64,000 nucleotides of DNA from Utricularia gibba (taxonomy: Eukaryota; Plantae; Magnoliophyta). The notes beneath the pieces were generated by a model. The model made no database searches, was not told the origin of the DNA, and was given only the letters and a program-made list of their open reading frames with translations. Position 1 is the stretch's first letter, and each line of letters opens with the position of its first letter. The position numbers and the translations under genes were made by a program. Of the stretch, positions 33,250 to 64,000 are shown piece after piece. The stretch spans positions 1 through 64,000 of the forward strand of contig NEEC01000111.1 of NCBI GenBank assembly GCA_002189035.1. The letters are read 5' to 3'.

Positions 33250-36200
33250 GACACCTCCCCCCTCAAGAAGGGAGATCATGCCAAAATGGAGGTGGCGGCA
33301 CTGCACATCCAAATGTCGAAAAAAGCGTGACTTTTCGCACGAGCGCGCCGAGCGTCCCTTGCGCGCGGTACCGCAGCGCCATCTCGCTCGCCATGCCCGC
33401 GCGGCATCCCGCGCAAGCGCGCGCATGGCGAGCGGCCAGGCGTCCCGCGCGAGTCATTCCCCGCGCATGCTCGAGCACGGCGTGCGGGCGGGCGTCCCGC
33501 GCGAGGCCATCCCCGCGCATGTTCGATCATGGCGTGCGGGGGGCGTCCGCGCGAGGCCATGCCCGCCCATGTCCGAGCATGGCGCGCGGGCGGGCGTCCC
33601 GCGCGAGACATTCCCCGCCCATGTCCGAGCATGGCGTGCGGGCGGGCGTCCCGTGGGAGTCATTCCCCGCGCATGCTCGAGCATGGCGCGCGGCGCCGTC
33701 CGCGCGAGACATTCCCCGCGCATGCTCGAGCAAGGCGTGCGGGCGGGCGTCCATGGCGAGTCACCGCCCACGCATGGCGTGCGGACGCCCGTCCCCGCGC
33801 GAGACATCGAACGTGCTTGCTCGAGCATCTTGAGGGGGAACCCACCCTACTCGCCCGATGGAGGTGCTGCCTCCACGCCATGCCCACGGAGCCGGCGCCG
33901 CACGCCTGGGGCACACCGCCCCGAGGGTGGGCCGGGTGCCTCTCGAGACACCTCCCCCCTCAAGAAGGGAGAACATGCCAAAACCCAGGTGGCGGCACTG
34001 GACATCCAAATGTTGAAAAAAGCGTGGCTTTTTTCGGTGGGCCACAAGGCGCCCGAGGGTGGGCCCAGTGCCTCCAGAGACACCTCCCCCCTCAAGAAGG
34101 GAGATCATGCCAAAGGGAGGTGGCGGCACTGGACATCCAAATGCCAAAAAAGCATGACTTTTCTCGAAAGGCCATTCTGGACGAGCCATCGCCTAGCATG
34201 CTCGAGCGCGGCGTGCGTCCCGCGCGAGGCATGCCCGCCCCATGTCGAGCATGGCGCGGGCGGGCGTCCCGCGGGAGACATTCCCCCCCATGTCCGAGCA
34301 TGGCGTGCAAGCGGGCGTCCATGTGAGTCATTCCCCGCGCATGCTCGAGCATGGCGTGCGGGCGGGCGTCCCGCGCGAGGCCATCCCCGCGCCGATCATG
34401 GCGTGCGGGGGGCGTCCCGCGCGAGGCCATGCCCCCATGTCCGAGCATGCGTGCGGGCGGGCGTCCCGTGGGAGTCATTCCCCGCGCATGCTCGAGCATG
34501 CGCGCGGGCGGCCGTCCCGCGCGAGACATTCCCCGCGCATGCTCGAGCAAGGCGTGCGGGCGGGCGTCCATGCGAGTCACCGCCCCACGCATGGCGTGCG
34601 GACGCCGTCCCGCGCGAGACATCGAACGTGCTTGCTCGAGCATCTTGAGGGGGAACCCACCCTACTCGCCCCGATGGAGGTGTGCCTGCCACGCCATGCC
34701 ACGGAGCCGGCGCCGCACGCCTGGGGCACACCGCCCCCGAGGGTGGGCCGGGTGCCTCTCGAGACACCTCCCCCTCAAGAAGGGAGAACATGCCAAAACC
34801 CAGGTGGCGGCACTGGACATCCAAATGTTGAAAAAAGCGTGGCTTTTTTCGGTGGGCCACAAGGCGCCCCGAGGGTGGGCCCAGTGCCTCCAGAGACACC
34901 TCCCCCCTCAAGAAGGGAGATCATGCCAAAAGGGAGGTGGCGGCACTGGACATCCAAATGCCCAAAAAAGCATGACTTTTCTCGAAAGGCCATTCTGGAC
35001 GAGCCATCGCCTAGCATGCTCGAGCGCGGCGTGCGTCCCGCGCGAGGCCATGCCCGCCATGTCCGAGCATGGCGCGCGGGCGGGCGTCCGCGGGAGACAT
35101 TCCCCGCCCATGTCCGAGCATGGCGTGCAAGCGGGCGTCCCTTGTGAGTCATTCCCCGCGCATGCTCGAGCATGGCGTGCGGGCGGGCGTCCCGCGCGAG
35201 GCCATCCCCGCGCATGTTCGATCATGGCGTGCGGGGGGGCGTCCCGCGCGAGGCCATGCCCGCCCATGTCCGAGCATGGCGTGCGGGCGGGCGTCCCGTG
35301 GGAGTCATTCCCCGCGCATGCTCGAGCATGGCGCGCGGGCGCCGTCGCGCGAGACATTCCCGCGCATGCTGGAGCAAGGCGTGCGGGCGGGCGTCCATGG
35401 CGAGTCACCGCCCACGCATGGCGTGCGGACGCCCGTCCCGCGCGAGACATCGAACGTGCTTGCTCGAGCATCTTGAGGGGGAACCCACCCCTACTCGCCC
35501 CGATGGAGGTGCTGCCTCCACGCCATGCCCACGGAGCCGGCGCCGCACGCCTGGGGCACACCCCCCGAGGGTGGGCCGGGTGCCTCTCGAGACACCTCCC
35601 CCCTCAAGAAGGGAGAACATGCCAAAACCCAGGTGGCGGCACTGGACATCCAAATGTTGAAAAAAGCGTGGCTTTTTTCGGTGGGCCACAAGGCGCCCCG
35701 AGGGTGGGCCCAGTGCCTCCAGAGACACCTCCCCCTCAAGAAGGGAGATCATGCCAAAAGGGAGGTGGCGGCACTGGACATCCAAATGCCCAAAAAAGCA
35801 TGACTTTTCTCGAAAGGCCATTCTGGACGAGCCATCGCCTAGCATGCTCGAGCGCGGCGTGCGTCCCGCGCGAGGCCATGCCCGCCCATGTCCGAGCATG
35901 GCGCGCGGGCGGGCGTCCCGCGGGAGACATTCCCCGCCCATGTCCGAGCATGGCGTGCAAGCGGGCGTCCCTTGTGAGTCATTCCCCGCGCATGCTCGAG
36001 CATGGCGTGCGGGCGGGCGTCCCGCGCGAGGCCATCCCCGCGCATGTTCGATCATGGCGTGCGGGGGGCGTCCCGCGCGAGGCCATGCCCGCCCATGTCC
36101 GAGCATGGCGCGCGGGCGGCGTCCGCGCGAGACATTCCCCATGTCCGAGCATGTGCGGGCGGGCGTCCCGCGCGAGACATTCCCCGCGCATGCTCGAGCA

Positions 36201-39200
36201 TGGCGCGCGGGCGGGCCGTCCCGCGCGAGACATTCCCCGCATGGCGTGCGGACGCCCGTCCCGCGCGAGACCTCGAGCATCTTGAGGGGGAACCCACCCC
36301 TACTCGCCCGATGGAGGTGCTGCCTCCACGCCATGCCCACGGAGCCGGCGCCGCGCCTGGGGCACACCGCCCCCGAGGGTGGGCCGGGTGCCTCTCGAGA
36401 CACCTCCCCCTCAAGAAGGGAGAACATGCCAAAACCCAGGTGGCGGCACTGGACATCCAAATGTTGAAAAAAGCGTGGCTTTTTTCGGTGGGCCACAAGG
36501 CGCCCCGAGGGTGGGCCCAGTGCCTCCAGAGACACCTCCCCCTCAAGAAGGGAGATCATGCCAAAAGGGAGGTGGCGGCACTGGACATCCAAATGCCCAA
36601 AAAAGCATGACTTTTCTCGAAAGGCCATTCTGGACGAGCCATCGCCTAGCATGCTCGAGCGCGGCGTGCGTCCCGCGCGAGGCCATGCCCGCCCATGTCC
36701 GAGCATGGCGCGCGGGCGGGCGTCCCGCGGGAGACATTCCCCGCCCATGTCCGAGCATGGCGTGCAAGCGGGCGTCCCTTGTGAGTCATTCCCCGCGCAT
36801 GCTCGAGCATGGCGTGCGGGCGGGCGTCCCGCGCGAGGCCATCCCGCGCATGTTCGATCATGGCGTGCGGGGGGCGTCCGCGCGAGGCCATGCCCGCCCA
36901 TGTCCGAGCATGGCGCGCGGGCGGGCGTCCCGCGCGAGACATTCCCCCATGTCGAGCATGGCGTGCGGCGGGCGTCCCGCGCGAGACATTCCCGCGCATG
37001 CTCGAGCATGGCGCGCGGGCGGCCGTCCCGCGCGAGACATTCCCCGCGCATGGCGTGCGGACGCGTCCCGCGCGAGACATCGAACGTGCTTGCTCGAGCA
37101 TCTTGAGGGGGAACCCACCCCTACTCGCCCCGATGGAGGTGCTGCCTCCACGCCATGCCCACGGAGCCGGCGCCGCACGCCTGGGGCACACCGCCCCCGA
37201 GGGTGGGCCGGGTGCCTCTCGAGACACCTCCCCCCTCAAGAAGGGAGAACATGCCAAAACCCAGGTGGCGGCACTGGACATCCAAATGTTGAAAAAAGCG
37301 TGGCTTTTTTCGGTGGGCCACAAGGCGCCCCGAGGGTGGGCCCAGTGCCTCCAGAGACACCTCCCCCTCAAGAAGGGAGATCATGCCAAAAGGGAGGTGG
37401 CGGCACTGGACATCCAAATGCCCAAAAAAGCATGACTTTTCTCGAAAGGCCATTCTGGACGAGCCATCGCCTAGCATGCTCGAGCGCGGCGTGCGTCCCG
37501 CGCGAGGCCATGCCCGCCCATGTCCGAGCATGGCGCGCGGGCGGGCGTCCCGCGGGAGACATTCCCGCCCATGTCCGAGCATGGCGTGCAAGCGGGCGTC
37601 CCTTGTGAGTCATTCCCCGCGCATGCTCGAGCATGGCGTGCGGGGGGCGTCCCGCGCGAGGCCATCCCGCGCATGTTCGATCATGGCGTGCGGGGGGGCG
37701 TCCCGCGCGAGGCCATGCCCGCCCATGTCCGAGCATGGCGCGCGATGCATGTCGAGCATGGCGTGCGGGCGGCGTCCCGCGCGAGACATTCCCCGCGCAT
37801 GCTCGAGCATGGCGCGCGGGCGGCCGTCCGCGCGAGACATTCCCGCGCATGGCGTGCGGACGCCCGTCCCGCGCGAGACATCGAACGTGCTTGCTCGAGC
37901 ATCTTGAGGGGGAACCCACCCCTACTCGCCCCGATGGAGGTGCTGCCTCCACGCCATGCCCACGGAGCCGGCGCCGCACGCCTGGGGCACACCGCCCCCG
38001 AGGGTGGGCCGGGTGCCTCTCGAGACACCTCCCCCTCAAGAAGGGAGAACATGCCAAAACCCAGGTGGCGGCACTGGACATCCAAATGTTGAAAAAAGCG
38101 TGGCTTTTTTCGGTGGGCCACAAGGCGCCCCGAGGGTGGGCCCAGTGCCTCCAGAGACACCTCCCCCCTCAAGAAGGGAGATCATGCCAAAAGGGAGGTG
38201 GCGGCACTGGACATCCAAATGCCCAAAAAAGCATGACTTTTCTCGAAAGGCCATTCTGGACGAGCCATCGCCTAGCATGCTCGAGCGCGGCGTGCGTCCG
38301 CGCGAGGCCATGCCCGCCCATGTCCGAGCATGGCGCGCGGGCGGGCGTCCCGCGGGAGACATTCCCGCCCATGTCCGAGCATGGCGTGCAAGCGGGCGTC
38401 CCTTGTGAGTCATTCCCCCGCATGCTCGAGCATGGCGTGCGGCGGGCGTCCCGCGCGAGGCCATCCCGCGCATGTTCGATCATGGCGTGCGGGGGGGCGT
38501 CCCGCGCGAGGCCATGCCCGCCCATGTCCGAGCATGGCGTGCGGGCGGGCGTCCCGTGGGAGTCATTCCCGCGCATGCTCGAGCATGGCGCGCGGGCGGC
38601 CGTCCCGCGCGAGACATTCCCCGCGCATGCTGGAGCAAGGCGTGCGGGCGGGCGTCCATGGCGAGTCACCGCCCCGCATGGCGTGCGGACGCCCGTCCCG
38701 CGCGAGACATCGAACGTGCTTGCTCGAGCATCTTGAGGGGGAACCCACCCCTACTCGCCCCGATGGAGGTGCTGCCTCCACGCCATGCCCACGGAGCCGG
38801 CGCCGCACGCCTGGGGCACACCGCCCCCGAGGGTGGGCCGGGTGCCTCTCGAGACACCTCCCCCCTCAAGAAGGGAGAACATGCCAAAACCCAGGTGGCG
38901 GCACTGGACATCCAAATGTTGAAAAAAGCGTGGCTTTTTTCGGTGGGCCACAAGGCGCCCCGAGGGTGGGCCCAGTGCCTCCAGAGACACCCCCCTCAAG
39001 AAGGGAGATCATGCCAAAAGGGAGGTGGCGGCACTGGACATCCAAATGCCCAAAAAAGCATGACTTTTCTCGAAAGGCCATTCTGGACGAGCCATCGCCT
39101 AGCATGCTCGAGCGCGGCGTGCGTCCCGCGCGAGGCCATGCCCGCCCATGTCCGAGCATGGCGCGCGGCGGGCGTCCCGCGGGAGACATTCCCCGCCCAT

Positions 39201-42200
39201 GTCCGAGCATGGCGTGCAAGCGGGCGTCCCTTGTGAGTCATTCCCCGCGCATGCTCGAGCATGGCGTGCGGGCGGGCGTCCCGCGAGGCCATCCCGCGCA
39301 TGTTCGATCATGGCGTGCGGGGGGCGTCCCGCGCGAGGCCATGCCCGCCCATGTCCGAGCATGGCGTGCGGGCGGGCGTCCCGTGGGAGTCATTCCCCGC
39401 GCATGCTCGAGCATGGCGCGCGGGCGGCCGTCCCGCGCGAGACATTCCCCGCGCATGCTGGAGCAAGGCGTGCGGGCGGGCGTCCATGGCGAGTCACCGC
39501 CCCACGCATGGCGTGCGGACGCCCGTCCCGCGCGAGACATCGAACGTGCTTGCTCGAGCATCTTGAGGGGGAACCCACCCCTACTCGCCCCGATGGAGGT
39601 GCTGCCTCCACGCCATGCCCACGGAGCCGGCGCCGCACGCCTGGGGCACACCGCCCCCCGAGGGTGGGCCGGGTGCCTCTCGAGACACCTCCCCCTCAAG
39701 AAGGGAGAACATGCCAAAACCCAGGTGGCGGCACTGGACATCCAAATGTTGAAAAAAGCGTGGCTTTTTTCGGTGGGCCACAAGGCGCCCCGAGGGTGGG
39801 CCCAGTGCCTCCAGAGACACCTCCCCCTCAAGAAGGGAGATCATGCCAAAAGGGAGGTGGCGGCACTGGACATCCAAATGCCCAAAAAAGCATGACTTTT
39901 CTCGAAAGGCCATTCTGGACGAGCCATCGCCTAGCATGCTCGAGCGCGGCGTGCGTCCCGCGCGAGGCCATGCCCGCCCATGTCCGAGCATGGCGCGCGG
40001 GCGGGCGTCCCGCGGGAGACATTCCCGCCCATGTCCGAGCATGGCGTGCAAGCGGGCGTCCCTTGTGAGTCATTCCCCGCGCATGCTCGAGCATGGCGTG
40101 CGGGCGGGCGTCCCGCGCGAGGCCATCCCCGCGCATGTTCGATCATGGCGTGCGGGGGCGTCCGCGCGAGGCATGCCCCGCCCATGTCCGAGCATGGCGT
40201 GCGGGCGGGCGTCCCGTGGGAGTCATTCCCCGCGCATGCTCGAGCATGGCGCGCGGGCGGCCGTCCGCGCGAGACATTCCCGCGCATGCTCGAGCAAGGC
40301 GTGCGGGCGGGCGTCCATGGCGAGTCACGCCCCACGCATGGCGTGCGGACGCCCGTCCCGCGCGAGACATCGAACGTGCTTGCTCGAGCATCTTGAGGGG
40401 GAACCCACCCCTACTCGCCCCGATGGAGGTGCTGCCTCACGCCATGCCCACGGAGCCGGCGCCGCACGCCTGGGGCACACCGCCCCCCGAGGGTGGGCCG
40501 GGTGCCTCTCGAGACACCTCCCCCCTCAAGAAGGGAGAACATGCCAAAACCCAGGTGGCGGCACTGGACATCCAAATGTTGAAAAAAGCGTGGCTTTTTT
40601 CGGTGGGCCACAAGGCGCCCCGAGGGTGGGCCCAGTGCCTCCAGAGACACCTCCCCCCTCAAGAAGGGAGATCATGCCAAAAGGGAGGTGGCGGCACTGG
40701 ACATCCAAATGCCCAAAAAAGCATGACTTTTCTCGAAAGGCCATTCTGGACGAGCCATCGCCTAGCATGCTCGAGCGCGGCGTGCGTCCCGCGCGAGGCC
40801 ATGCCCGCCCATGTCCGAGCATGGCGCGCGGGCGGCGTCCCGCGGGAGACATTCCCCCCATGTCCGAGCATGGCGTGCAAGCGGGCGTCCCTTGTGAGTC
40901 ATTCCCCGCGCATGCTCGAGCATGGCGTGCGGGCGGGCGTCCCGCGCGAGGCCATCCCCGCGCATGTTCGATCATGGCGTGCGGGGGGGCGTCCCGCGCG
41001 AGGCCATGCCCGCCCATGTCCGAGCATGGCGTCCCGCGCGAGACATTCCCCGCCCATGTCCGAGCATGGCGTGCGGGCGGGCGTCCCGCGCGAGACATTC
41101 CCGCGCATGCTCGAGCATGGCGCGCGGGCGGCCGTCCCGCGCGAGACATTCCCCGCGCATGGCGTGCGGACGCCCGTCCCGCGCGAGACATCGAACGTGC
41201 TTGCTCGAGCATCTTGAGGGGGAACCCACCCCTACTCGCCCCGATGGAGGTGCTGCCTCCACGCCATGCCCACGGAGCCGGCGCCGCACGCCTGGGGCAC
41301 ACCGCCCCCCGAGGGTGGGTGGGCCGGGTGCCTCTCGAGACACCTCCCCCTCAAGAAGGGAGAACATGCCAAAACCCAGGTGGCGGCACTGGACATCCAA
41401 ATGTTGAAAAAAGCGTGGCTTTTTTCGGTGGGCCACAAGGCGCCCCGAGGGTGGGCCCAGTGCCTCCAGAGACACCTCCCCCCTCAAGAAGGGAGATCAT
41501 GCCAAAAGGGAGGTGGCGGCACTGGACATCCAAATGCCCAAAAAAGCATGACTTTTCTCGAAAGGCCATTCTGGACGAGCCATCGCCTAGCATGCTCGAG
41601 CGCGGCGTGCGTCCCGCGCGAGGCCATGCCCGCCCATGTCCGAGCATGGCGCGCGGGCGGGCGTCCCGCGGGAGACATTCCCCGCCCATGTCCGAGCATG
41701 GCGTGCAAGCGGGCGTCCCTTGTGAGTCATTCCCCGCGCATGCTCGAGCATGGCGTGCGGGCGGGCGTCCCGCGCGAGGCCATCCCGCGCATGTTCGATC
41801 ATGGCGTGCGGGGGGGCGTCCCGCGCGAGGCCATGGCCATGTCGAGCATGAGACATTCCCGCCCATGTCCGAGCATGGCGTGCGGGCGGGCGTCCGCGCG
41901 AGACATTCCCCGCGCATGCTCGAGCATGGCGCGCGGGCGGCCGTCCCGCGCGAGACATTCCCCGCATGGCGTGCGGACGCCCGTCCCGCGCGAGACATCG
42001 AACGTGCTTGCTCGAGCATCTTGAGGGGAACCCACCCCTACTCGCCCCGATGGAGGTGCTGCCTCCACGCCATGCCCACGGAGCCGGCGCCGCACGCCTG
42101 GGGCACACCGCCCCCGAGGGTGGGCCGGGTGCCTCTCGAGACACCTCCCCCTCAAGAAGGGAGAACATGCCAAAACCCAGGTGGCGGCACTGGACATCCA

Positions 42201-45200: not shown

Positions 45201-48200
45201 CGCATGCCCGTGCGGGCCACGCCCGTCCGCGCGAGACATCGAACGTGCTTGCTCGAGCATCTTGAGGGGGAACCCACCCCTACTCGCCCCGATGGAGGTG
45301 CTGCCTCCACGCCATGCCCACGGAGCCGGCGCGCACGCCTGGGGCACACCGCCCCCCGAGGGTGGGCCGGGTGCCTCTCGAGACACCTCCCCCCTCAAGA
45401 AGGGAGAACATGCCAAAACCCAGGTGGCGGCACTGGACATCCAAATGTTGAAAAAAGCGTGGCTTTTTTCGGTGGGCCACAAGGCGCCCCGAGGGTGGGC
45501 CCAGTGCCTCCAGAGACACCTCCCCCTCAAGAAGGGAGATCATGCCAAAAGGGAGGTGGCGGCACTGGACATCCAAATGCCCAAAAAAGCATGACTTTTC
45601 TCGAAAGGCCATTCTGGACGAGCCATCGCCTAGCATGCTCGAGCGCGGCGTGCGTCCGCGCGAGGCCATGCCCGCCCATGTCCGAGCATGCGCGCGGCGG
45701 GCGTCCCGGGAGACATTCCCCGCCCATGTCCGAGCATGGCGTGCAAGCGGGCGTCCCTTGTGAGTCATTCCCCGCGCATGCTCGAGCATGGCGTGCGGGC
45801 GGGCGTCCCGCGCGAGGCCATCCCGCGCATGTTCGATCATGGCGTGCGGGCGGGCGTCCCGCGCGATTCCCCGCCATGTCCGAGCATGGTGCGGGCGGCG
45901 TCCCGCATTCCCGCGCATGCTCGAGCATGGCGCGCGGGCGGCCGTCCGCGAGACATTCCCGCGCATGGCGTGCGCCCGTCGCCGCGTCCCGCGCGAGACA
46001 TCGAACGTGCTTGCTCGAGCATCTTGAGGGGGAACCCACCCCTACTCGCCCCGATGGAGGTGCTGCCTCCACGCCATGCCCACGGAGCCGGCGCCGCACG
46101 CCTGGGGCACACCGCCCCCGAGGGTGGGCCGGGTGCCTCTCGAGACACCTCCCCCCTCAAGAAGGGAGAACATGCCAAAACCCAGGTGGCGGCACTGGAC
46201 ATCCAAATGTTGAAAAAAGCGTGGCTTTTTTCGGTGGGCCACAAGGCGCCCCGAGGGTGGGCCCAGTGCCTCCAGAGACACCTCCCCCTCAAGAAGGGAG
46301 ATCATGCCAAAAGGGAGGTGGCGGCACTGGACATCCAAATGCCCAAAAAAGCATGACTTTTCTCGAAAGGCCATTCTGGACGAGCCATCGCCTAGCATGC
46401 TCGAGCGCGGCGTGCGTCCCGCGCGAGGCCATGCCCGCCCATGTCCGAGCATCCAAATGCGGGCGGGCGTCCCGAAAAGAAGCGTGGCTTTTGTTCCGAG
46501 CATGGCGCCAAGCGGCGCGTCCCTTGTGAGCCAGTTCCCGCGCGCAGAGACAGCATCTCCCCCCTCAAGAAGCGGAGCGTCATGCCAGGGGAGGTGGCGG
46601 CACTGGACGCGCAAATGCCCAAGATCAGCATGACGTGGGGGGAAAGGCCATTCTGGACGAGCCATCGCCTAGCATGCTCGAGCGCGGCGTGCGTCCCGCG
46701 CGAGGCCATGCCCGCCCATGTCCGAGCATGGCGCGCGGCGGCGTCCGCGGGAGACATTCCCCGCCCATGTCCGAGCATGGCGTGCAAGCGGGCGTCCCTT
46801 GTGAGTCATTCCCCGCCATGCTCGAGCATGGCGTGCGGGCGGGCGTCCCGCGCGAGGCCATCCCCGCGCATGTTCGATCATGGCGTGCGGGGGGCGTCCC
46901 GCGCGAGCCATGCCCGCCCATGTCCGAGCATGGCGTGCGGGCGGGCGTCCCGGGAGTCATTCCCCGCGCATGCTCGAGCATGGCGCGCGGGCGGCCGTCC
47001 CGCGCGAGACATTCCCCGCGCATGCTGAGCAAGGCGTGCGGGCGGGCGTCCATGGCGAGTCACCGCCCCGCATGGCGTGCGGACGCCCGTCCCGCGCGAG
47101 ACATCGAACGTGCTTGCTCGAGCATCTTGAGGGGGAACCCACCCCTACTCGCCCCGATGGAGGTGCTGCCTCCACGCCATGCCCACGGAGCCGGCGCCGC
47201 ACGCCTGGGGCACACCGCCCCCGAGGGTGGGCCGGGTGCCTCTCGAGACACCTCCCCCTCAAGAAGGGAGAACATGCCAAAACCCAGGTGGCGGCACTGG
47301 ACATCCAAATGTTGAAAAAAGCGTGGCTTTTTTCGGTGGGCCACAAGGCGCCCCGAGGGTGGGCCCAGTGCCTCCAGAGACACCTCCCCCCTCAAGAAGG
47401 GAGATCATGCCAAAAGGGAGGTGGCGGCACTGGACATCCAAATGCCCAAAAAAGCATGACTTTTCTCGAAAGGCCATTCTGGACGAGCCATCGCCTAGCA
47501 TGCTCGAGCGCGGCGTGCGTCCCGCGCGAGGCCATGCCCGCCCATGTCCGAGCATGGCGCGCGGGCGGGCGTCCCGCGGGAGACATTCCCCGCCCATGTC
47601 CGAGCATGGCGTGCAAGCGGGCGTCCCTTGTGAGTCATTCCCCGCGCATGCTCGAGCATGGCGTGCGGCGGGCGTCCCGCGCGAGGCCATCCCCGCGCAT
47701 GTTCGATCATGGCGTGCGGGGGGCGTCCCGCGCGAGGCCATGCCCGCCCATGTCCGAGCATGGCGTGCGGGCGGGCGTCCCGTGGGAGTCATTCCCCGCG
47801 CATGCTCGAGCATGGCGCGCGGGCGGCCGTCCCGCGCGAGACATTCCCGCGCATGCTCGAGCAAGGCGTGCGGGCGTCCATGGCGAGTCACCGCCCCACG
47901 CATGGCGTGCGGACGCCCGTCCCGCGCGAGACATCGAACGTGCTTGCTCGAGCATCTTGAGGGGAACCCACCCCTACTCGCCCCGATGGAGGTGCTGCCT
48001 CCACGCCATGCCCACGGAGCCGGCGCCGCACGCCTGGGGCACACCGCCCCCCGAGGTGGGCCGGGTGCCTCTCGAGACACCTCCCCCCTCAAGAAGGAGA
48101 ACATGCCAAAACCCAGGTGGCGGCACTGGACATCCAAATGTTGAAAAAAGCGTGGCTTTTTTCGGTGGGCCACAAGGCGCCCCGAGGGTGGGCCCAGTGC

Positions 48201-51200: not shown

Positions 51201-54200
51201 CTCGAGCATCTTGAGGGGAACCCACCCCTACTCGCCCCGATGGAGGTGCTGCCTCCACGCCATGCCCACGGAGCCGGCGCCGCACGCCTGGGGCACACCG
51301 CCCCCGAGGGTGGGCCGGGTGCCTCTCGAGACACCTCCCCCCTCAAGAAGGGAGAACATGCCAAAACCCAGGTGGCGGCACTGGACATCCAAATGTTGAA
51401 AAAAGCGTGGCTTTTTTCGGTGGGCCACAAGGCGCCCCGAGGGTGGGCCCAGTGCCTCCAGAGACACCTCCCCCCTCAAGAAGGGAGATCATGCCAAAAG
51501 GGAGTGGCGGCACTGGACATCCAAATGCCCAAAAAAGCATGACTTTTCTCGAAAGGCCATTCTGGACGAGCCATCGCCTAGCATGCTCGAGCGCGGCGTG
51601 CGTCCCGCGCGAGGCCATGCCCGCCCATGTCCGAGCATGGCCGCGGGCGGCGTCCCGCGGGAGACATTCCCCGCCCATGTCCGAGCATGGCGTGCAAGCG
51701 GGCGTCCCTTGTGAGTCATTCCCCGCGCATGCTCGAGCATGGCGTGCGGGCGGGCGTCCCGCGCGAGGCCATCCCCGCGCATGTTCGATCATGGCGGCGG
51801 GGGCGTCCCGCGCGAGGCCATGCCCGCCCATGTCCGAGCATGGCGTGCGGCGGGCGTCCCGTGGGAGTCATTCCCCGCGCATGCTCGAGCATGGCGCGCG
51901 GGCGGCCGTCCCGCGCGAGACATTCCCGCGCATGCTCGAGCAACGGCGGGCGTCCATGGCGAGTCACCGCCCCACGCATGGCGTGCGGACGCCCGTCCCG
52001 CGCGAGACATCGAACGTGCTTGCTCGAGCATCTTGAGGGGGAACCCACCCCTACTCGCCCCGATGGAGGTGCTGCCTCCACGCCATGCCCACGAGCCGGC
52101 GCCGCACGCCTGGGCACACCGCCCCCCGAGGGTGGGCCGGGTGCCTCTCGAGACACCTCCCCCCTCAAGAAGGGAGAACATGCCAAAACCCAGGTGGCGG
52201 CACTGGACATCCAAATGTTGAAAAAAGCGTGGCTTTTTTCGGTGGGCCACAAGGCGCCCCGAGGGTGGGCCCAGTGCCTCCAGAGACACCTCCCCCCTCA
52301 AGAAGGGAGATCATGCCAAAGGGAGGTGGCGGCACTGGACATCCAAATGTCAAAAAACATGACTTTTCTCGAAAGGCCATTCTGGACGAGCCATCGCCTA
52401 GCCCCGCGCATGCTCGAGCATGGCGTGCGGGCGGGCGTCCCGCGCGAGGCCATCCCCGCGCATGTTCGATCATGCGTGCGGGGGGCGTGCCATGCCCCCC
52501 ATGTCCGAGCATGGCGCGCGCGGGCGTCCCGCGCGAGACATTCCCGCCCATGTCCGAGCATGGCGTGCGGGCGGGCGTCCCGCGCGAGACATTCCCCGCG
52601 CATGCTCGAGCATGGCGCGCGGGGCCGTCCCGCGCGAGACATTCCCCGCGCATGGCGTGCGGACGCCCGTCCCGCGCGAGACATCGAACGTGCTTGCTCG
52701 AGCATCTTGAGGGGAACCCACCCCTACTCGCCCCGATGGAGGTGCTGCCTCCACGCCATGCCCACGGAGCCGGCGCCGCACGCCTGGGGCACACCGCCCC
52801 CGAGGGTGGGCCGGGTGCCTCTCGAGACACCTCCCCCCTCAAGAAGGGAGAACATGCCAAAACCCAGGTGGCGGCACTGGACATCCAAATGTTGAAAAAA
52901 GCGTGGCTTTTTTCGGTGGGCCACAAGGCGCCCCGAGGGTGGCCCAGTGCCTCCAGAGACACCTCCCCCTCAAGAAGGGAGATCATGCCAAAAGGGAGGT
53001 GGCGGCACTGGACATCCAAATGCCCAAAAAAGCATGACTTTTCTCGAAAGGCCATTCTGGACGAGCCATCGCCTAGCATGCTCGAGCGCGGCGTGCGTCC
53101 CGCGCGAGGCCATGCCCGCCCATGTCCGAGCATGGCGCGCGGCGGGCGTCCGCGGGAGACATTCCCCGCCCATGTCCGAGCATGGCGTGCAAGCGGGCGT
53201 CCCTTGTGAGTCATTCCCCGCGCATGCTCGAGCATGGCGTGCGGGCGGCGTCCCGCGCGAGGCCATCCGCGCATGTTCGATCATGGCGTGCGGGGGCGTC
53301 CCGCGCGAGGCCATGCCCGCCCATGTCCGGCCCGGGCGGGCGTCCCGTGGGAGTGCCTCCAGAGACACCTCCCCCCTCAAGAAGGGAGATCATGCCAAAA
53401 GGGAGGTGGCGGCACTGGACATCCAAATGCCCAAAAAAGCATGACTTTTCTCGAAAGGCCATTCTGGACGAGCCATCGCCTAGCATGCTCGAGCGCGGCG
53501 TGCGTCCCGCGCGAGGCCATGCCCGCCCATGTCCGAGCATGGCGCGCGGGCGGCGTCCCGCGGGAGACATTCCCCGCCCATGTCCGAGCATGGCGTGCAA
53601 GCGGGCGTCCCTTGTGAGTCATTCCCGCGCATGCTCGAGCATGGCGTGCGGGCGGGCGTCCCGCGCGAGGCCATCCCCGCGCATGTTCGATCATGGCGTG
53701 CGGGGGGCGTCCCGCGCGAGGGTGGGCCATGCCTCCCCGCCCATGTCCGAGCATGGCGGACGAGCCATCGCGGGCGGGCGTCCCGAGGCCATGCATTCCC
53801 CGCGCGGCGGCGTCCCGCGGGATGCCCATCGAGCATGGCGCGCGGGCGTCCCCGCGCGAGACATTCCCCGCGCATGCTCGAGCATGGCGTGCGGGCGGGC
53901 GTCCCGAGGCGCATGCGGGCGGCGTCCATGGCGAGTCACCGCCCACGCATGGCGTGCGGACGCCCGTCCCGCGCGAGACATCGAACGTGCTTGCTCGAGC
54001 ATCTTGAGGGGAACCCACCCCTACTCGCCCCGATGGAGGTGCTGCCTCCACGCCATGCCCACGGAGCCGGCGCCGCACGCCTGGGGCACACCGCCCCCCG
54101 AGGGTGGGCCGGGTGCCTCTCGAGACACCTCCCCCCTCAAGAAGGGAGAACATGCCAAAACCCAGGTGGCGGCACTGGACATCCAAATGTTGAAAAAAGC

Positions 54201-57200: not shown

Positions 57201-60200
57201 GCGTGCGGGCGGGCGTCCATGGCGAGTCACCGCCCCACGCATGGCGTGCGGACGCCCGTCCCGCGCGAGACATCGAACGTGCTTGCTCGAGCATCTTGAG
57301 GGGGAACCCACCCCTACTCGCCCCGATGGAGGTGCTGCCTCCACGCCATGCCCACGGAGCCGGCGCCGCACGCCTGGGGCACACCGCCCCCCGAGGGTGG
57401 GCCGGGTGCCTCTCGAGACACCTCCCCCCTCAAGAAGGGAGAACATGCCAAAACCCAGGTGGCGGCACTGGACATCCAAATGTTGAAAAAAGCGTGGCTT
57501 TTTTCGGTGGGCACAAAGGCGCCCCGAGGGTGGGCCCAGTGCCTCCAGAGACACCTCCCCCCTCAAGAAGGGAGATCATGCCAAAAGGGAGGTGGCGGCA
57601 CTGGACATCCAAATGCCCAAAAAAGCATGACTTTTCTCGAAAGGCCATTCTGGACGAGCCATCGCCTAGCATGCTCGAGCGCGGCGTGCGTCCCGCGCGA
57701 GGCCATGCCCGCCCATGTCCGAGCATGGCGCGCGGGGGCGTCCCGCGGGAGACATTCCCCGCCCATGTCCGAGCATGGCGTGCAAGCGGGCGTCCCTTGT
57801 GAGTCATTCCCCGCGCATGCTCGAGCATGGCGTGCGGCGGGCGTCCCGCGCGAGGCCATCCCGCGCATGTTCGATCATGGCGTGCGGGGGCGTCCCGCGC
57901 CATGCCCGCCCATGTCGAGCAGCGTCCCGCGCCATTCCCCGCCCATGTCCGAGCATGGCGCGGGCGGGCGTCCCGCGCGAGACATTCCCCGCGCATGCTC
58001 GAGCATGGGCGCGGGCGCCGTCCGCGCCCCCGCGCATGGCGTGCGGACGCCCGTCCCGCGCGAGACATCGAACGTGCTTGCTCGAGCATCTTGAGGGGAA
58101 CCCACCCCTACTCGCCCCGATGGAGGTGCTGCCTCCACGCCATGCCCACGGAGCCGGCGCCGCACGCCTGGGGCACACCGCCCCCCGAGGGTGGGCCGGG
58201 TGCCTCTCGAGACACCTCCCCCCTCAAGAAGGGAGAACATGCCAAAACCCAGGTGGCGGCACTGGACATCCAAATGTTGAAAAAAGCGTGGCTTTTTTCG
58301 GTGGGCCACAAGGCGCCCCGAGGGTGGGCCCAGTGCCTCCAGAGACACCTCCCCCCTCAGAAGGGAGATCATGCCAAAAGGGAGGTGGCGGCACTGGACA
58401 TCCAAATGCCCAAAAAAGCATGACTTTTCTCGAAAGGCCATTCTGGACGAGCCATCGCCTAGCATGCTCGAGCGCGGCGTGCGTCCCGCGCGAGGCCATG
58501 CCCGCCCATGTCCGAGCATGGCGCGCGGGCGGGCGTCCCGCGGAGACATTCCCCGCCCATGTCCGAGCATGGCGTGCAAGCGGGCGTCCCTTGTGAGTCA
58601 TTCCCCGCGCATGCTCGAGCATGGCGTGCGGGCGGGCGTCCCGCGCAGGCCATCCCCGCGCATGTTCGATCATGGCGTGCGGGGGGCGTCCGCGCGAGGC
58701 CATGCCCGCCCATGTCCGAGCATGGCGCGCGGGCGGCGTCCGCGCGAGACATTCCCCGCCCATGTCCGAGCATGGCGTGCGGGCGGGCGCCGCGCGAGAC
58801 ATTCCCCGCGCATGCTCGAGCATGGCGCGCGGGCGGCCGTCCCCGCGAGACATTCCCGCGCATGGCGTGCGGACGCCCGTCCGCGCGAGACATCGAACGT
58901 GCTTGCTCGAGCATCTTGAGGGGGAACCCACCCCTACTCGCCCCGATGGAGGTGCTGCCTCCACGCCATGCCCACGGAGCCGGCGCCGCACGCCTGGGGC
59001 ACACCGCCCCCGAGGGTGGGCCGGGTGCCTCTCGAGACACCTCCCCCCTCAAGAAGGGAGAACATGCCAAAACCCAGGTGGCGGCACTGGACATCCAAAT
59101 GTTGAAAAAAGCGTGGCTTTTTTCGGTGGGCCACAAGGCGCCCCGAGGGTGGGCCCAGTGCCTCCAGAGACACCTCCCCCCTCAAGAAGGGAGATCATGC
59201 CAAAAGGGAGGTGGCGGCACTGGACATCCAAATGCCCAAAAAAGCATGACTTTTCTCGAAAGGCCATTCTGGACGAGCCATCGCCTAGCATGCTCGAGCG
59301 CGGCGTGCGTCCCGCGCGAGGCCATGCCCGCCCATGTCCGAGCATGGCGCGCGGGCGGGCGTCCCGCGGGAGACATTCCCCGCCCATGTCCGAGCATGGC
59401 GTGCAAGCGGGCGTCCCTTGTGAGTCATTCCCCGCGCATGCTCGAGCATGGCGTGCGGGCGGGCGTCCCGCGCGAGGCCATCCCCGCGCATGTTCGATCA
59501 TGGCGTGCGGGGGGGCGTCCCGCGCGAGGCCATGCCCGCCCATGTCCGAGCATGGCGTGCGGGCGGGCGTCCCGTGGGAGTCATTCCCCGCGCATGCTCG
59601 AGCATGGCGCGCGGGCCGTCCCGCGCGAGACATTCCCCGCGCATGCTGAGCAAGGCGTGCGGGCGGGCGTCCATGGCGAGTCACCGCCCCACGCATGGCG
59701 TGCGGACGCCCGTCCGCGCGAGACATCGAACGTGCTTGCTCGAGCATCTTGAGGGGGAACCCACCCCTACTCGCCCCGATGGAGGTGCTGCCTCCACGCC
59801 ATGCCCACGGAGCCGGCGCCGCACGCCTGGGGCACACCGCCCCCGAGGTGGGCCGGGTGCCTCTCGAGACACCTCCCCCCTCAAGAAGGGAGAACATGCC
59901 AAAACCCAGGTGCGGCACTGGACATCCAAATGTTGAAAAAAGCGTGGCTTTTTTCGGTGGGCCACAAGGCGCCCGAGGGTGGGCCCAGTGCCTCCAGAGA
60001 CACCTCCCCCCTCAAGAAGGGAGATCATGCCAAAAGGGAGGTGCGGCACTGGACATCCAAATGCCCAAAAAAGCATGACTTTTCTCGAAAGGCCATTCTG
60101 GACGAGCCATCGCCTAGCATGCTCGAGCGCGGCGTGCGTCCCGCGCGGCCATGCCCGCCCATGTCCGAGCATGGCGCGCGCGGGCGTCCCGCGGGAGACA

Positions 60201-63200
60201 TTCCCCGCCCATGTCCGAGCATGGCGCAAGCGGGCGTCCCTTGTGAGTCATTCCCCGCGCATGCTCGAGCATGGCGTGCGGCGGGCGTCCCGCGCGAGGC
60301 CATCCCGCGCATGTTCGATCATGGCGTGCGGGGGGCGTCCCGCGCGAGGCCATGCCCGCCCATGTCCGAGCATGGCGTGCGGCGGGCGTCCCGTGGAGTC
60401 ATTCCCCGCGCATGCTCGAGCATGGCGCGCGCGGCGGCCGTCCCGCGCGAGACATTCCCGCGCATGCTGGAGCAAGGCGTGCGGGCGGCGTCCATGGCGA
60501 GTCACCGCCCCACGCATGGCGTGCGGACGCCCGTCCCGCGCGAGACATCGAACGTGCTTGCTCGAGCATCTTGAGGGGAACCCACCCCTACTCCCCGATG
60601 GAGGTGCTGCCTCCACGCCATGCCCACGGAGCCGGCGCCGCACGCCTGGGCACACCGCCCCCCCGAGGGTGGGCCGGGTGCCTCTCGAGACACCTCCCCC
60701 CTCAAGAAGGGAGAACATGCCAAAACCCAGGTGGCGGCACTGGACATCCAAATGTTGAAAAAAGCGTGGCTTTTTTCGGTGGGCCACAAGGCGCCCCGAG
60801 GGTGGGCCCAGTGCCTCCAGAGACACCTCCCCCCTCAAGAAGGGAGATCATGCCAAAAGGAGGTGGCGGCACTGGACATCCAAATGCCCAAAAAAGCATG
60901 ACTTTTCTCGAAAGGCCATTCTGGACGAGCCATCGCCTAGCATGCTCGAGCGCGGCGTGCGTCCCGCGCGAGGCCATGCCCGCCCATGTCCGAGCATGGC
61001 GCGCGGGCGGGCGTCCCGCGGGAGACATTCCCCGCCCATGTCCGAGCATGGCGTGCAAGCGGGCGTCCCTTGTGAGTCATTCCCCGCGCATGCTCGAGCA
61101 TGGCGTGCGGGCGGGCGTCCCGCGCGAGGCCATCCCCGCGCATGTTCGATCATGGCGTGCGGGGGGTCCCGCGCGAGGCCATGCCCGCCCATGTCGAGCA
61201 TGTGCGGGTCATTCCCCGCGCATGCTCGAGCATGGCGCGCGGCGGCCGTCCCGCGCGAGACATTCCCCGCGCATGCGCGGCGTGACATTCCCCGCATGGC
61301 GTGCGGACGCCCGTCCCGCGCGAGACATCGAACGTGCTTGCTCGAGCATCTTGAGGGGAACCCACCCCTACTCGCCCCGATGGAGGTGCTGCCTCCACGC
61401 CATGCCCACGGAGCCGGCGCCGCACGCCTGGGGCACACCGCCCCCCGAGGGTGGGCCGGGTGCCTCTCGAGACACCTCCCCCCTCAAGAAGGGAGAACAT
61501 GCCAAAACCCAGGTGGCGGCACTGGACATCCAAATGTTGAAAAAAGCGTGGCTTTTTTCGGTGGCCACAAGGCGCCCCGAGGGTGGGCCCAGTGCCTCCA
61601 GAGACACCTCCCCCCTCAAGAAGGGAGATCATGCCAAAAGGGAGGTGCGGCACTGGACATCCAAATGCCCAAAAAAGCATGACTTTTCTCGAAAGGCCAT
61701 TCTGGACGAGCCATCGCCTAGCATGCTCGAGCGCGGCGTGCGTCCCCGCGTGCCCTGTGGCATGCCGCGCGGGCGGGCGGGCTTTGGAGGGCGGGTCGGG
61801 CGCCCAAGTCATTCCCCGCGCATGCTCGAGCATGGCGTGCGGGCGGGCGTCCCGCGCGAGGCCATCCCCGCGCATGTTCGATCATGGCGTGCGGGGGGGG
61901 TCCCGCGCGAGGCCATGCCCGCCCATGTCCGAGCATGGCGGGCGTCCCGCGCGAGTCATGTCCCCGCGCATGCTCTCGAGCATGGCGCGCGGGCGGCCGT
62001 CCCGCGCGAGACATTCCCCGCGCATGGCATGCGGAGTCACCGTCCCGCGCGAGACATCGAACGTGCTTGCTCGAGCATCTTGAGGGGGAACCCACCCCTA
62101 CTCGCCCCGATGGAGGTGCTGCCTCCACGCCATGCCCACGGAGCCGGCGCCGCACGCCTGGGGCACACCGCCCCCCGAGGTGGGCCGGGTGCCTCTCGAG
62201 ACACCTCCCCCCTCAAGAAGGAGAACATGCCAAAACCCAGGTGGCGGCACTGGACATCCAAATGTTGAAAAAAGCGTGGCTTTTTTCGGTGGGCCACAAG
62301 GCGCCCCGAGGGTGGCCCAGTGCCTCCAGAGACACCTCCCCCCTCAAGAAGGGAGATCATGCCAAAAGGAGGTGGCGGCACTGGACATCCAAATGCCCAA
62401 AAAAGCATGACTTTTCTCGAAAGGCCATTCTGGACGAGCCATCGCCTAGCATGCTCGAGCGCGGCGTGCGTCCCGCGCGAGGCCATGCCCGCCCATGTCC
62501 GAGCATGGCGCGCGCGGCGCGGCGTCCCGCGGGAGACATTCCCCGCCCATGTCCGAGCATGGCGTGCAAGCGGGCGTCCCTTGTGAGTCATTCCCCGCGC
62601 ATGCTCGAGCATGGCGTGCGGCGGCGTCCCGCGCGAGGCCATCCCGCGCATGTTCGATCATGGCGTGCGGGGCGTCCCGCGCGAGGCCATGCCCGCCCAT
62701 GTCCGAGCATGGCGCGCCCGCGCGAGCCGCGCATGTCCGAGCATGGCGTTCCCGCGCGAGACATTCCCGCGCATGCTCGAGCATGGCGCGCGGCGCGTCC
62801 CGCGCGAGACATTCCCCGCGCATGGCGTGCGGACGCCCGTCCCGCGCGAGACATCGAACGTGCTTGCTCGAGCATCTTGAGGGGAACCCACCCCTACTCG
62901 CCCCGATGGAGGTGCTGCCTCCACGCCATGCCCACGGAGCCGGCGCCGCACGCCTGGGGCACACCGCCCCCCGAGGGTGGGCCGGGTGCCTCTCGAGACA
63001 CCTCCCCCCTCAAGAAGGGAGAACATGCCAAAACCCAGGTGGCGGCACTGGACATCCAAATGTTGAAAAAAGCGTGGCTTTTTTCGGTGGCCACAAGGCG
63101 CCCCGAGGGTGGGCCCAGTGCCTCCAGAGACACCTCCCCCCTCAAGAAGGGAGATCATGCCAAAAGGAGGTGGCGGCACTGGACATCCAAATGCCCAAAA

Positions 63201-64000
63201 AAGCATGACTTTTCTCGAAAGGCCATTCTGGACGAGCCATCGCCTAGCATGCTCGAGCGCGGCGTGCGTCCCGCGCGAGGCCATGCCCGCCCATGTCCGA
63301 GCATGGCGCGCGGGCGGGCGTCCCGCGGGAGACATTCCCCGCCCATGTCCGAGCATGGCGTGCAAGCGGGCGTCCCTTGTGAGTCATTCCCCGCGCATGC
63401 TCGAGCATGGCGTGCGGCGGGCGTCCCGCGCGAGGCCATCCCCGCGCATGTTCGATCATGGCGTGCGGGGGGCGTCCCGCGCGAGGCCATGCCCGCCCAT
63501 GTCCGAGCATGGCGCGCGGCGGGCGTCCCGCGCGAGACATTCCCCGCCCATGCGAGCATGGCGTGCGCGGGCGTCCCGCGCGAGACATTCCCCGCGCATG
63601 CTCGAGCATGGCGCGCGGGCGGCCGCGCGCGAGACATTCCCCGCGCATGGCGTGCGGACGCCCGTCCCGCGCGAGACATCGAACGTGCTTGCTCGAGCAT
63701 CTTGAGGGGAACCCACCCCTACTCGCCCCGATGGAGGTGCTGCCTCCACGCCATGCCCACGGAGCCGGCGCCGCACGCCTGGGGCACACCGCCCCCGAGG
63801 GTGGGCCGGGTGCCTCTCGAGACACCTCCCCCCTCAAGAAGGGAGAACATGCCAAAACCCAGGTGGCGGCACTGGACATCCAAATGTTGAAAAAAGCGTG
63901 GCTTTTTTCGTGGGCCACAAGGCGCCCCGAGGGTGGGCCCAGTGCCTCCAGAGACACCTCCCCCCTCAAGAAGGGAGATCATGCCAAAAGGGAGGTGGCG
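33250..64000. repeat. IGS-derived tandem array, ~37 monomers of mostly ~760-840 bp, each with two initiator-like blocks and about eight 52-bp subrepeats
   Basis: Marker catcgaacgtgcttgctcgagcatcttgagggg counted 37 times from ~33806 to ~63677 (one copy partly deleted at 36268); monomer is the same as in the IGS of units 1 and 2; no rRNA sequence or 25S-proximal spacer sequence appears before the window end. Confidence 0.93.

What the first reader, a model, noticed from the sequence alone, without database searches (positions are those of the whole stretch)
33250..64000. More than 30 kb array of rDNA spacer-promoter monomers (~75 initiator-like motifs) upstream of the third rRNA unit
Seen: the ~0.8-kb IGS monomer has 3 copies upstream of unit 1 and 2 upstream of unit 2, but about 37 head-to-tail copies upstream of unit 3, in the same orientation, running off the window. 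The spacer is therefore >34 kb versus 6.4 and 5.4 kb. Each monomer keeps two intact promoter-like blocks, so a promoter cassette is amplified, not just a short subrepeat. Known: multiplied spacer promoters/enhancers modulate Pol I loading in Xenopus and Drosophila, and IGS-derived satellites exist in Solanaceae and legumes. Inference: this is either a giant-IGS unit or a NOR border where spacer promoters have become a satellite, which could act as an enhancer battery, a Pol I factor sink, or a source of silencing RNA.
Basis: partly seen in the sequence, partly recalled or inferred. Interest (0 to 1): 0.85.

Follow-up and report, generated by a model that had tools for sequence, protein, structure and literature searches.

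The report
Hugely expanded ribosomal DNA spacer repeat
In this plant assembly, one ribosomal RNA gene has an upstream spacer swollen to over 34 kb by about 37 copies of a 0.83-kb repeat carrying promoter look-alikes; this kind of spacer expansion is known, and the copy number rests on low-quality sequence.

Summary
Three 45S rDNA units lie on the minus strand. Their upstream spacers are 6,424 bp, 5,408 bp and more than 34 kb. The long spacer holds about 37 head-to-tail monomers of about 0.83 kb (33,974 to 64,000). Each monomer has two 133-bp blocks, one inverted copy of the block core, and about seven 52-bp subrepeats.

The blocks are true relatives of the sequence next to the 5' ETS: 96% and 85% identical over -80 to +10. 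They are also related to a canonical plant Pol I initiator (TATAAGGGGGG) that sits 0.72 kb after each 25S gene. The transcription start itself is unmapped.

Two cautions apply.
- Consensus quality drops sharply at about 21.1 kb, to 1-2% single-base deletions, and stays low to the window end.
- At 46,460-46,642 the sequence interleaves fragments of two templates, which marks a seam over conflicting reads.

No reads could be laid, so the array's exact length and its continuity are unverified.

My reading is a real hyper-expanded spacer made by unequal exchange (confidence 0.58). It is the same kind of thing as the expanded spacers and spacer-derived satellites described in tomato and other plants. 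The proposed enhancer, factor-sink and siRNA roles are untested. Earlier scan notes report similar arrays on other contigs of this genome. Interest is about 0.3.

The parts
24220..29963 (-). rDNA unit 3 (25S 24220-27621, 5.8S 27864-28019, 18S 28158-29963), the gene downstream of the expanded spacer
   Evidence: Rfam. It differs from units 1 and 2 only by about 1-bp indels; the apparent substitutions are clustered, misaligned indels.
29964..31442 (-). Presumed 5' ETS of unit 3 (about 1.48 kb), if transcription starts in the gene-proximal block
   Evidence: Unique sequence begins about 10 nt after the A of TTGAGGGGG in the last block. The start site is not mapped.
31442..31660 (-). Gene-proximal pair of 133-bp promoter-like blocks (core CTTCTTGAGGGGGAGGTG)
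31456..33143 (-). Two class-C proximal monomers (842 and 845 bp, without 52-bp repeats). Units 1 and 2 have only one.
   Evidence: Identity matrix and clustering.
33143..33974 (-). Class-D monomer, 98-99% identical to the D monomers of spacers 1 and 2
33974..64000 (-). Array of about 37 monomers of the main type (classes A, B, E, I and singletons), running off the window. Each has a b block, an a block, an inverted core, and about seven 52-bp subrepeats.
46460..46642 (-). Garbled seam: collinear 6-15-nt fragments of the block template and of the 52-bp template alternate. Read as a consensus built over structurally conflicting reads.
53250..53400 (-). Clean internal junction: a b block truncated after GGAGGCACT and joined to a 52-bp unit, giving a 1,298-bp irregular unit
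61728..61813 (-). Second short stretch of sequence found nowhere else in the spacers (a unique variant or consensus noise)
8138..11783 (-). Reference spacer 1 with monomer order C-D-A-F. Its single A monomer (9835-10672) is 97-99% identical to the class-A array monomers.
20314..22953 (-). Reference spacer 2 with monomer order C-D-A. Consensus quality collapses from about 21,115 rightwards.
12320..12460 (-). Distal-most block pair of spacer 1 with the canonical plant initiator TATAAGGGGGGAGGTG (A at 12336) and TCTAAGGGGGGAC (12441), 0.72 kb after the 25S end. Equivalent copies have their A at 175 and 23499.

Best explanation
This is a structural variant of the 45S rDNA repeat. One intergenic spacer has been hyper-expanded by repeated unequal exchange (sister-chromatid or intra-array) between the about 0.83-kb spacer monomers that every normal unit carries in one to three copies. 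The amplified monomer is the class-A unit of the normal spacer. It brings with it two duplicates of the promoter-like block, one inverted copy of the block core, and about seven 52-bp palindrome-bearing subrepeats. The expansion is recent or is kept homogenised with the normal units. Functionally it is most likely a tolerated by-product of rDNA recombination, an early stage on the route from spacer subrepeat to spacer-derived satellite. The extra promoter-like copies could bind Pol I factors or give low-level spacer transcripts, as Arabidopsis spacer promoters do, but nothing here shows that. What is shown: the anatomy, the homology and the near-identity of the copies. What is inferred: the mechanism of origin, the reality of the full length, and any activity.
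For: 1. The array starts in normal context: 18S, ETS, C, C, D, then A-type monomers. Its commonest class is 97-99% identical to the single A monomer of spacers 1 and 2.
2. Within class A (15 copies), almost all differences are singleton 1-bp indels and only one substitution is shared. The copies are therefore effectively identical.
3. At least four classes recur (A x15 including the two in spacers 1 and 2, B x8, plus E and I types). They differ only in the first 3-4 subrepeats. Their order is aperiodic but has local multi-monomer motifs (A A x B E twice; B A A x twice). This is the pattern expected from unequal exchange and not from an assembler looping on one sequence.
4. Smaller products of the same process are visible nearby: spacer 2 lacks monomer F and spacer 3 has a duplicated C.
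5. No unique flank interrupts 30 kb, so reads made only of monomers must exist.
6. Precedent exists. Tomato has rDNA units with spacers of 8.4-11.4 kb against 3.4 kb normal, and a 23.9-kb spacer stretch attached to a partial 25S (PMC2679016). Spacer repeats becoming satellites are reviewed in PMC8724763.
7. CpG observed/expected is 1.02 in the array, close to the normal spacer's 1.07, so there is no sign of long decay.
8. Leads only, unchecked: scan notes report a >15-kb array of the same kind on another contig (s1-246630) and the distal TATA motif 5.4 kb past the window end (s1-267416).
Against: No read-level evidence could be obtained. The single read-laying run was rejected by a filter and still counted. 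Consensus quality collapses at about 21.1 kb (6 differences in 8 kb before, 35 in 1.7 kb after, nearly all 1-bp deletions) and stays at 1-2% indels to the window end. The array therefore rests on thin or unpolished data. At 46,460-46,642 the consensus interleaves two templates. Reads disagreed there, so continuity across that point is doubtful and the array may be two shorter arrays stitched together. The distal end is outside the window. Public DNA runs hold only 0.55-0.58 of the sampled words of 30000-35000. That fits the error load but verifies nothing about length.
Confidence: 0.58

Rival explanations
1. Assembly artefact in length or linkage. Moderately expanded spacers, or a separate monomer array, exist, but the assembler chained noisy long reads in shifted register or joined reads from different loci. 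On this view the 37-copy array attached to unit 3 does not exist as one molecule.
For: There is a sharp drop in consensus quality at about 21.1 kb and 1-2% deletion-type errors through unit 3 and the array. There is a 182-bp seam at 46,460-46,642 whose sequence alternates between two templates. Multi-monomer motifs recur, as register-shifted overlaps could produce.
Against: Assemblers usually collapse tandem repeats and rarely expand them. The 30 kb contains no unique flank, so reads consisting only of monomers over read-length scale must exist. Since normal spacers have only one A monomer, that already implies real expansion. The recurring motifs are not identical copies (class G versus class A at the third position). 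Error of 1-2% rather than 10-15% implies that several reads contributed.
Confidence: 0.27
2. The array is an independent spacer-derived satellite at the edge of the NOR, or a separate locus, not a spacer between two genes. It would then be a fully emancipated satellite like those of tomato, potato or Vigna.
For: The array runs off the window with no distal boundary seen. Such satellites are well documented (PMC8724763, PMC2679016, PMC9183113). Another contig is said to carry a >15-kb array (note s1-246630, unchecked).
Against: The proximal end is a normal, complete rDNA unit with normal C and D monomers. Monomers are effectively identical to those of normal spacers, which suggests continued homogenisation inside the rDNA. 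An unchecked note (s1-267416) places the distal TATA motif, and by its wording a 25S gene, about 5-6 kb past the window end with the same 0.7-kb geometry as in spacers 1 and 2.
Confidence: 0.1
3. The repeats are not upstream spacer promoters but lie inside a very long 5' ETS. On this view the real start site is the canonical TATAAGGGGGG block 0.72 kb after the previous 25S, and all monomers are transcribed as pre-rRNA leader.
For: Only the distal block has the canonical plant TATA-GGGG initiator. Subrepeats downstream of the start site are known in plants (PMC8724763, PMC2679016). Runs labelled 'RNA?' hold 0.35-0.38 of the sampled words of 30000-35000, more than the 0.29 that the presumed ETS alone could supply.
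Against: Homology between the gene-proximal block and the spacer blocks ends about 10 nt after the core. That is the pattern described from memory for Arabidopsis promoter duplicates and fits a start at the proximal copy. A 1.48-kb ETS is typical, whereas a 40-kb leader for unit 3 would be extraordinary. The RNA labels are guesses, and rDNA contamination of RNA libraries is common.
Confidence: 0.2

Closest known systems
Expanded spacers and spacer-derived satellite in tomato (Jo et al. 2009, PMC2679016)
   Same: rDNA units whose spacer is several-fold longer than normal through amplification of a spacer subrepeat. One clone has a 23.9-kb spacer stretch attached to a partial 25S. Unequal crossover and gene conversion are proposed as the mechanism. 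The subrepeat period of 52-53 bp matches the 52-bp unit here, which may be coincidence.
   Different: In tomato the amplified unit is the short 52-53-bp type I subrepeat itself. Here the amplified unit is a 0.83-kb composite containing two promoter-like blocks plus a set of 52-bp repeats. The tomato variants are associated with retrotransposon insertions and degraded coding regions; none is seen here. The tomato arrays are backed by BAC sequence and FISH; this array is not.
Spacer promoters of Arabidopsis thaliana rRNA genes (Fultz et al. 2023, PMC10619934; Doelling et al. 1993 as cited there)
   Same: Duplicates of the gene-promoter core lie in the spacer, in the same orientation, interspersed with short repeats, and their number varies between units.
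   Different: Arabidopsis has 0 to 4 per spacer across two fully sequenced NORs. This spacer has about 80 in the window. Activity is shown in Arabidopsis (low-level Pol I transcription) but is untested here. The core here lacks the TATA part in all copies except the distal-most.
[quoted passage not shown]
   Same: Duplicated promoter-like segments carry the start-site motif, a reverse-complement copy of that motif lies shortly downstream, and GC-rich minisatellites of variable length lie between them. That study used PacBio reads.
   Different: Cucurbita has one genic and one spacer copy, and the length variation lies in the minisatellites. Here the whole promoter-plus-minisatellite cassette is multiplied.
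Drosophila 240-bp spacer repeats and Xenopus spacer promoters with 60/81-bp enhancers (established knowledge, recalled from memory; Xenopus enhancer function is cited in PMC8724763)
   Same: Tandem spacer repeats that each contain a copy of part of the gene promoter, with proposed roles in recruiting Pol I factors.
   Different: Copy numbers per spacer are roughly 2-12, not about 40. Function there is shown by injection or transfection assays. For plants, PMC8724763 states that direct proof of an enhancer or silencing role is missing.
Spacer-linked tandem repeats that also form separate loci: Cannabis CS-237 (PMC9183113) and Physcomitrella PpNATR76, transcribed into lncRNA (PMC6302065)
   Same: A tandem repeat that is resident in the 45S spacer and is amplified.
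   Different: Those repeats are shown by FISH at rDNA and non-rDNA sites, or shown to be transcribed. Neither has been tested here.

Membership tests
rDNA intergenic-spacer subrepeat array with promoter duplicates (spacer promoters) | Lies between a 25S 3' end and the next 18S, in the same orientation as the genes | tested here: inconclusive
   The proximal end is met: the array joins the ETS and 18S of unit 3 through normal C and D monomers. The distal end is outside the window, and only an unchecked note (s1-267416) suggests that a 25S gene follows.
rDNA intergenic-spacer subrepeat array with promoter duplicates (spacer promoters) | Sequence homology of the repeat to the gene promoter, including the start-site core | tested here: met
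   The a blocks are 95.6% and the b blocks about 85% identical to the gene-proximal block over -80 to +10. 74 of 76 copies keep the core. The blocks are 74% identical to the canonical TATAAGGGGGG block.
rDNA intergenic-spacer subrepeat array with promoter duplicates (spacer promoters) | The reference block is the real Pol I promoter, and the copies initiate transcription | not testable with these tools
   No start-site data are available. The read-laying run was lost. The only hint is that runs labelled 'RNA?' hold more words than the ETS can supply.
Spacer-derived satellite DNA (tomato, potato, Vigna, Vicia type) | The monomer is homologous to a spacer subrepeat | tested here: met
   The monomers are 97-99% identical to the A monomer of the normal spacers.
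Spacer-derived satellite DNA (tomato, potato, Vigna, Vicia type) | Long contiguous array (tens of kb or more) confirmed independently of one assembly | tested here: inconclusive
   The assembly shows 30 kb, but the consensus is low quality and has a seam. No reads were laid.
Spacer-derived satellite DNA (tomato, potato, Vigna, Vicia type) | Arrays exist independently of rRNA coding units, at separate loci or stripped of genes | tested here: not met
   Within the window the array is directly attached to a complete rDNA unit. Other loci could not be examined.
Higher-order-repeat satellite | A strict multi-monomer period | tested here: not met
   The class order is aperiodic, with only local recurring motifs.

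The most novel reading that the evidence does not exclude
The array is real and active. About 80 promoter copies in sense orientation, and about 40 inverted cores, would load Pol I factors and produce convergent spacer transcripts. A single giant spacer would then act as a local factor sink or siRNA source that sets the on/off state of neighbouring rRNA genes. It would be a natural, promoter-bearing satellite caught at birth inside a NOR of a very small plant genome.
Probability: 0.08. Interest if true: 0.6.

Novelty: new member of a known kind. Interest (0 to 1): 0.3.

Why it matters
If the array is real, it is a clean, young example of how a spacer cassette that includes promoter duplicates begins to turn into a satellite while still attached to a functional-looking rRNA gene. 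Arabidopsis has 0-4 spacer promoters per spacer (PMC10619934), and about 80 copies would be an extreme natural test case for whether plant spacer promoters and subrepeats enhance, titrate or silence Pol I transcription. The field says this question is still unproven in plants (PMC8724763). If the array is an assembly product, the finding is a useful flag that this contig is unreliable from about 21 kb onwards.

Tried and rejected
1. Read support. I therefore obtained no depth, junction or transcript-end data.
2. Protein route to other assemblies. I translated one monomer in the frame of a spurious 1,122-aa ORF and found no relatives among 5.8 billion proteins. This gave no access to other contigs, and it also shows there is no coding content.
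3. An exact-pattern scan of JGI metagenome contigs for the block core returned no hits.
4. Rfam at gathering threshold found nothing in the array except the rRNA genes elsewhere in the window.
5. Unit 3 as a diverged pseudogene: rejected. Its 15 apparent substitutions cluster in three spots and are misaligned indels, and the remaining differences are homopolymer 1-bp indels.
6. A strict higher-order repeat, or the assembler looping on one segment: rejected by the aperiodic class order.
7. CpG decay as a sign of an old silenced array: not seen.
8. Species identity. An earlier scan note about a cysteine pair in a mitochondrial protein, together with the genome size of about 100 Mb, suggests a bladderwort (Utricularia). 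I could not verify this, and the genome paper I recalled is not held.
Full report
**What is in the window.** Rfam finds three complete 45S rDNA units on the minus strand:
- 25S at 880-4291, 13058-16469 and 24220-27621.
- 5.8S at 4533-4688, 16711-16866 and 27864-28019.
- 18S at 4826-6633, 17003-18811 and 28158-29963.

Transcription therefore runs from right to left, and 'upstream' means higher coordinates. The spacers are 6634-13057 (6,424 bp), 18812-24219 (5,408 bp) and 29964 to beyond 64000 (more than 34 kb). G+C is 68-70% across all spacer repeats. Earlier scan notes identify the genome as a plant.

**Checking the observation.** The sense-strand motif TCTCCCTTCTTGAGGGG (up to 2 errors) occurs 100 times: 10, 8 and 82 times in spacers 1, 2 and 3. 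The copies nearly always form pairs 131-134 bp apart. Tandem Repeats Finder independently reports a 133-bp duplication alternating with about seven copies of a 52-bp unit across the whole region. I anchored monomers on the proximal member of each pair. This gives 37 pairs and two single copies between 33974 and 64000, with spacing mostly 790-837 bp.

**Anatomy of the monomer.** Read in the rRNA sense, a monomer has four parts:
- a b-type 133-bp block;
- an a-type 133-bp block;
- about 130 bp that contain a reverse-complement copy of the block core (CTTGAGGGGGAACCC on the plus strand, once per monomer; 37 hits against 0.02 expected by chance);
- about seven 52-bp subrepeats that carry the palindrome CATGCTCGAGCATG or degenerate forms of it.

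A global identity matrix and clustering define the classes. Class C is proximal and lacks 52-bp repeats. Class D comes second. Class A is the main type. Class F is the distal 978-bp unit. Spacer 1 reads C-D-A-F and spacer 2 reads C-D-A.

Spacer 3 reads C C D A A G B E A A A B E B H A I J K A A B L B A M N O B A A P B A A Q R S B and continues past the window. Class consensuses differ only in the first three or four 52-bp subrepeats, and the blocks and the rest are identical. Among the 15 class-A copies, two of which are the single A monomers of spacers 1 and 2, nearly every difference is a singleton 1-bp indel. Only one substitution is shared. The array is therefore a mosaic of a few essentially identical variants of the normal spacer's A monomer. 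The order is aperiodic but has local multi-monomer motifs (A A x B E twice, B A A x twice).

**Are the blocks promoter-like?** The last block before unique sequence lies at about 8125, 20300 and 31442 in the three units. It is followed by a presumed 5' ETS of about 1.48 kb. Spacer a blocks are 95.6% identical to it over -80 to +10, and b blocks are about 85% identical. Homology stops about 10 nt after the A of TTGAGGGGG.

In the array, 74 of 76 copies keep the core CTTCTTGAGGGGG(G)AGGTG. The 5-versus-6 G variation fits homopolymer error. The distal-most pair of each normal spacer lies 0.72 kb after the 25S end, with the A at 175, 12336 and 23499. It is 74% identical to the gene-proximal block and reads TATAAGGGGGGAGGTG. 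That matches the plant Pol I start-site motif quoted for Cucurbita, TATATAGGGG (PMC6589552).

The block family is therefore a promoter-derived family. Which copy is the working gene promoter is not known. I favour the proximal copy because of the +10 homology break and the ordinary ETS length. The rival is a start at the canonical distal copy, which would make the repeats part of a long leader. It keeps about 0.2 probability. Its only support is weak: runs guessed to be RNA hold 0.35-0.38 of the sampled words of 30000-35000, more than the 0.29 that the ETS could supply.

**Quality of the sequence.** Units 1 and 2 differ at 4 indel columns over the 5.76-kb coding region, 18S to 25S. Unit 3 differs from both by 22 indel columns and 15 'substitutions'. 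The substitutions cluster at three spots and are misaligned indels, and 19 of the 22 indel columns lie in homopolymers.

I aligned unit 2 and its spacer to unit 1. There are 6 differences from 13058 to 21100, then 35 from 21115 to 22802. Nearly all of the latter are single-base deletions. The same load of 1-2% continues through unit 3 and the array. This is the signature of thinly supported or unpolished long-read consensus.

A 13-mer trust scan finds two stretches of sequence seen nowhere else in the spacers: 46460-46642 and 61728-61813. The first is not a biological junction. Collinear fragments of 6-15 nt from the block template and from the 52-bp template alternate along it. That is what a consensus caller produces when the stacked reads have two different structures. 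Continuity across about 46.5 kb is therefore doubtful. The stretches with no such seam are about 13 kb (33.1-46.4 kb) and about 17 kb (46.6-64 kb). A cleaner internal junction at about 53.35 kb could be a real deletion or recombination product.

**Is the array real?** I could not test this with reads. The argument from the sequence alone has three parts.
- Normal spacers hold a single A monomer. Thirty kilobases without any unique flank can only be assembled from reads made purely of monomers, so expansion well beyond normal must exist.
- The recurrent, distinct classes in aperiodic order argue against looping by the assembler.
- The error level of 1-2%, not 10-15%, implies that more than one read contributed.

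On the other side, the seam and the poor consensus mean that the exact count, and even the linkage of the two halves, are not trustworthy. Two unchecked scan notes are relevant as leads. One places the distal TATA motif 5,426 nt beyond the window end (s1-267416). With the geometry seen in spacers 1 and 2, that implies about 4-5 more monomers, a total spacer of about 40 kb, and a fourth unit. The other reports a >15-kb array of the same cassette on another contig (s1-246630). I put about 0.58 on a real giant spacer, about 0.27 on an artefact of length or linkage, and about 0.1 on a gene-free satellite or NOR edge.

**How it most likely arose and what it does.** The normal spacer already contains three or four related 0.83-kb monomers sharing identical 133-bp blocks and 52-bp repeats. 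This is an ideal substrate for out-of-register exchange. Small products of that process are visible in the same window: spacer 2 lacks F and spacer 3 has two C monomers. Repeated exchange, partly in multi-monomer steps, explains the class order.

The near-identity of the copies and the undepleted CpG (observed/expected 1.02, against 1.07 in the normal spacer) point to a recent origin or ongoing homogenisation. This is the route proposed for tomato, where spacers of 8.4-11.4 kb (normal 3.4 kb) and a 23.9-kb spacer stretch attached to a partial 25S were sequenced as intermediates towards a spacer-derived satellite (PMC2679016). Further cases are reviewed in PMC8724763, PMC9183113 and PMC6302065.

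Activity is pure inference. Arabidopsis spacer promoters (0-4 per spacer) drive low-level Pol I transcription (PMC10619934). Cucurbita also has a sense motif paired with an inverted motif at its promoter duplicates (PMC6589552). However, PMC8724763 states that direct proof of enhancer or silencer function of plant spacer repeats is lacking.

**Verdict.** The idea of an amplified promoter cassette is supported at the level of homology. The choice between giant spacer and NOR border is unresolved but leans towards giant spacer. The functional proposals are untested.

The kind of event is known, so this would be a new member of that kind. Its unusual features are that the amplified unit is a composite carrying promoter duplicates, and that the copy number (about 80 promoter-like blocks) is far above the 0-4 seen in Arabidopsis. 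Because the array rests on low-quality consensus with a seam, I score interest at about 0.3.

Noticed in passing
window 21100-21120 (boundary), affecting 21115-64000: Consensus quality changes abruptly. There are 6 differences from unit 1 over 13058-21100, then 35 over 21115-22802, nearly all 1-bp deletions. The whole right part of the contig, including rDNA unit 3, looks unpolished or thinly covered.
   Followed up: yes
window 12320-12460, 23490-23610, 170-285 (minus strand): Only the distal-most block pair of each spacer, 0.72 kb after the 25S end, keeps a canonical plant Pol I initiator (TATAAGGGGGGAGGTG, with TCTAAGGGGGGAC about 102 bp upstream). All other copies read CTTCTTGAGGGGGG. Which copy is the working promoter is an open question.
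   Followed up: partly
window 12810-12885 (minus strand); the same region presumably follows the other 25S genes: An (ACTTGGTT) microsatellite of about 9 units lies in the region just after 25S. It is flanked by three copies of the motif CACTTTACATGATGGGAAA (about 12965, 12795 and 12690). These are candidate termination or processing repeats.
   Followed up: no
window 13040-13058 (minus strand): A run of about 16 C lies immediately at the 3' end of 25S, followed by a T run.
   Followed up: no
window 28020-28157: By the Rfam boundaries ITS1 is only 138 bp and ITS2 is 242 bp. From memory, this ITS1 is short for an angiosperm.
   Followed up: no
window 7659-7918 and 30979-31238: There are 2.7 copies of a degenerate repeat of about 100 bp inside the presumed 5' ETS (72% matches).
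   Followed up: no
window 31456-33143: Spacer 3 has two copies of the proximal class-C monomer where units 1 and 2 have one. The same spacer therefore carries a second, independent unequal-exchange product.
   Followed up: partly
window 8892-12260 (+): A spurious open reading frame of 1,122 codons runs antisense through the spacer repeats. A monomer-length translation of it has no relatives among 5.8 billion proteins. Gene callers may nevertheless report it.
   Followed up: yes
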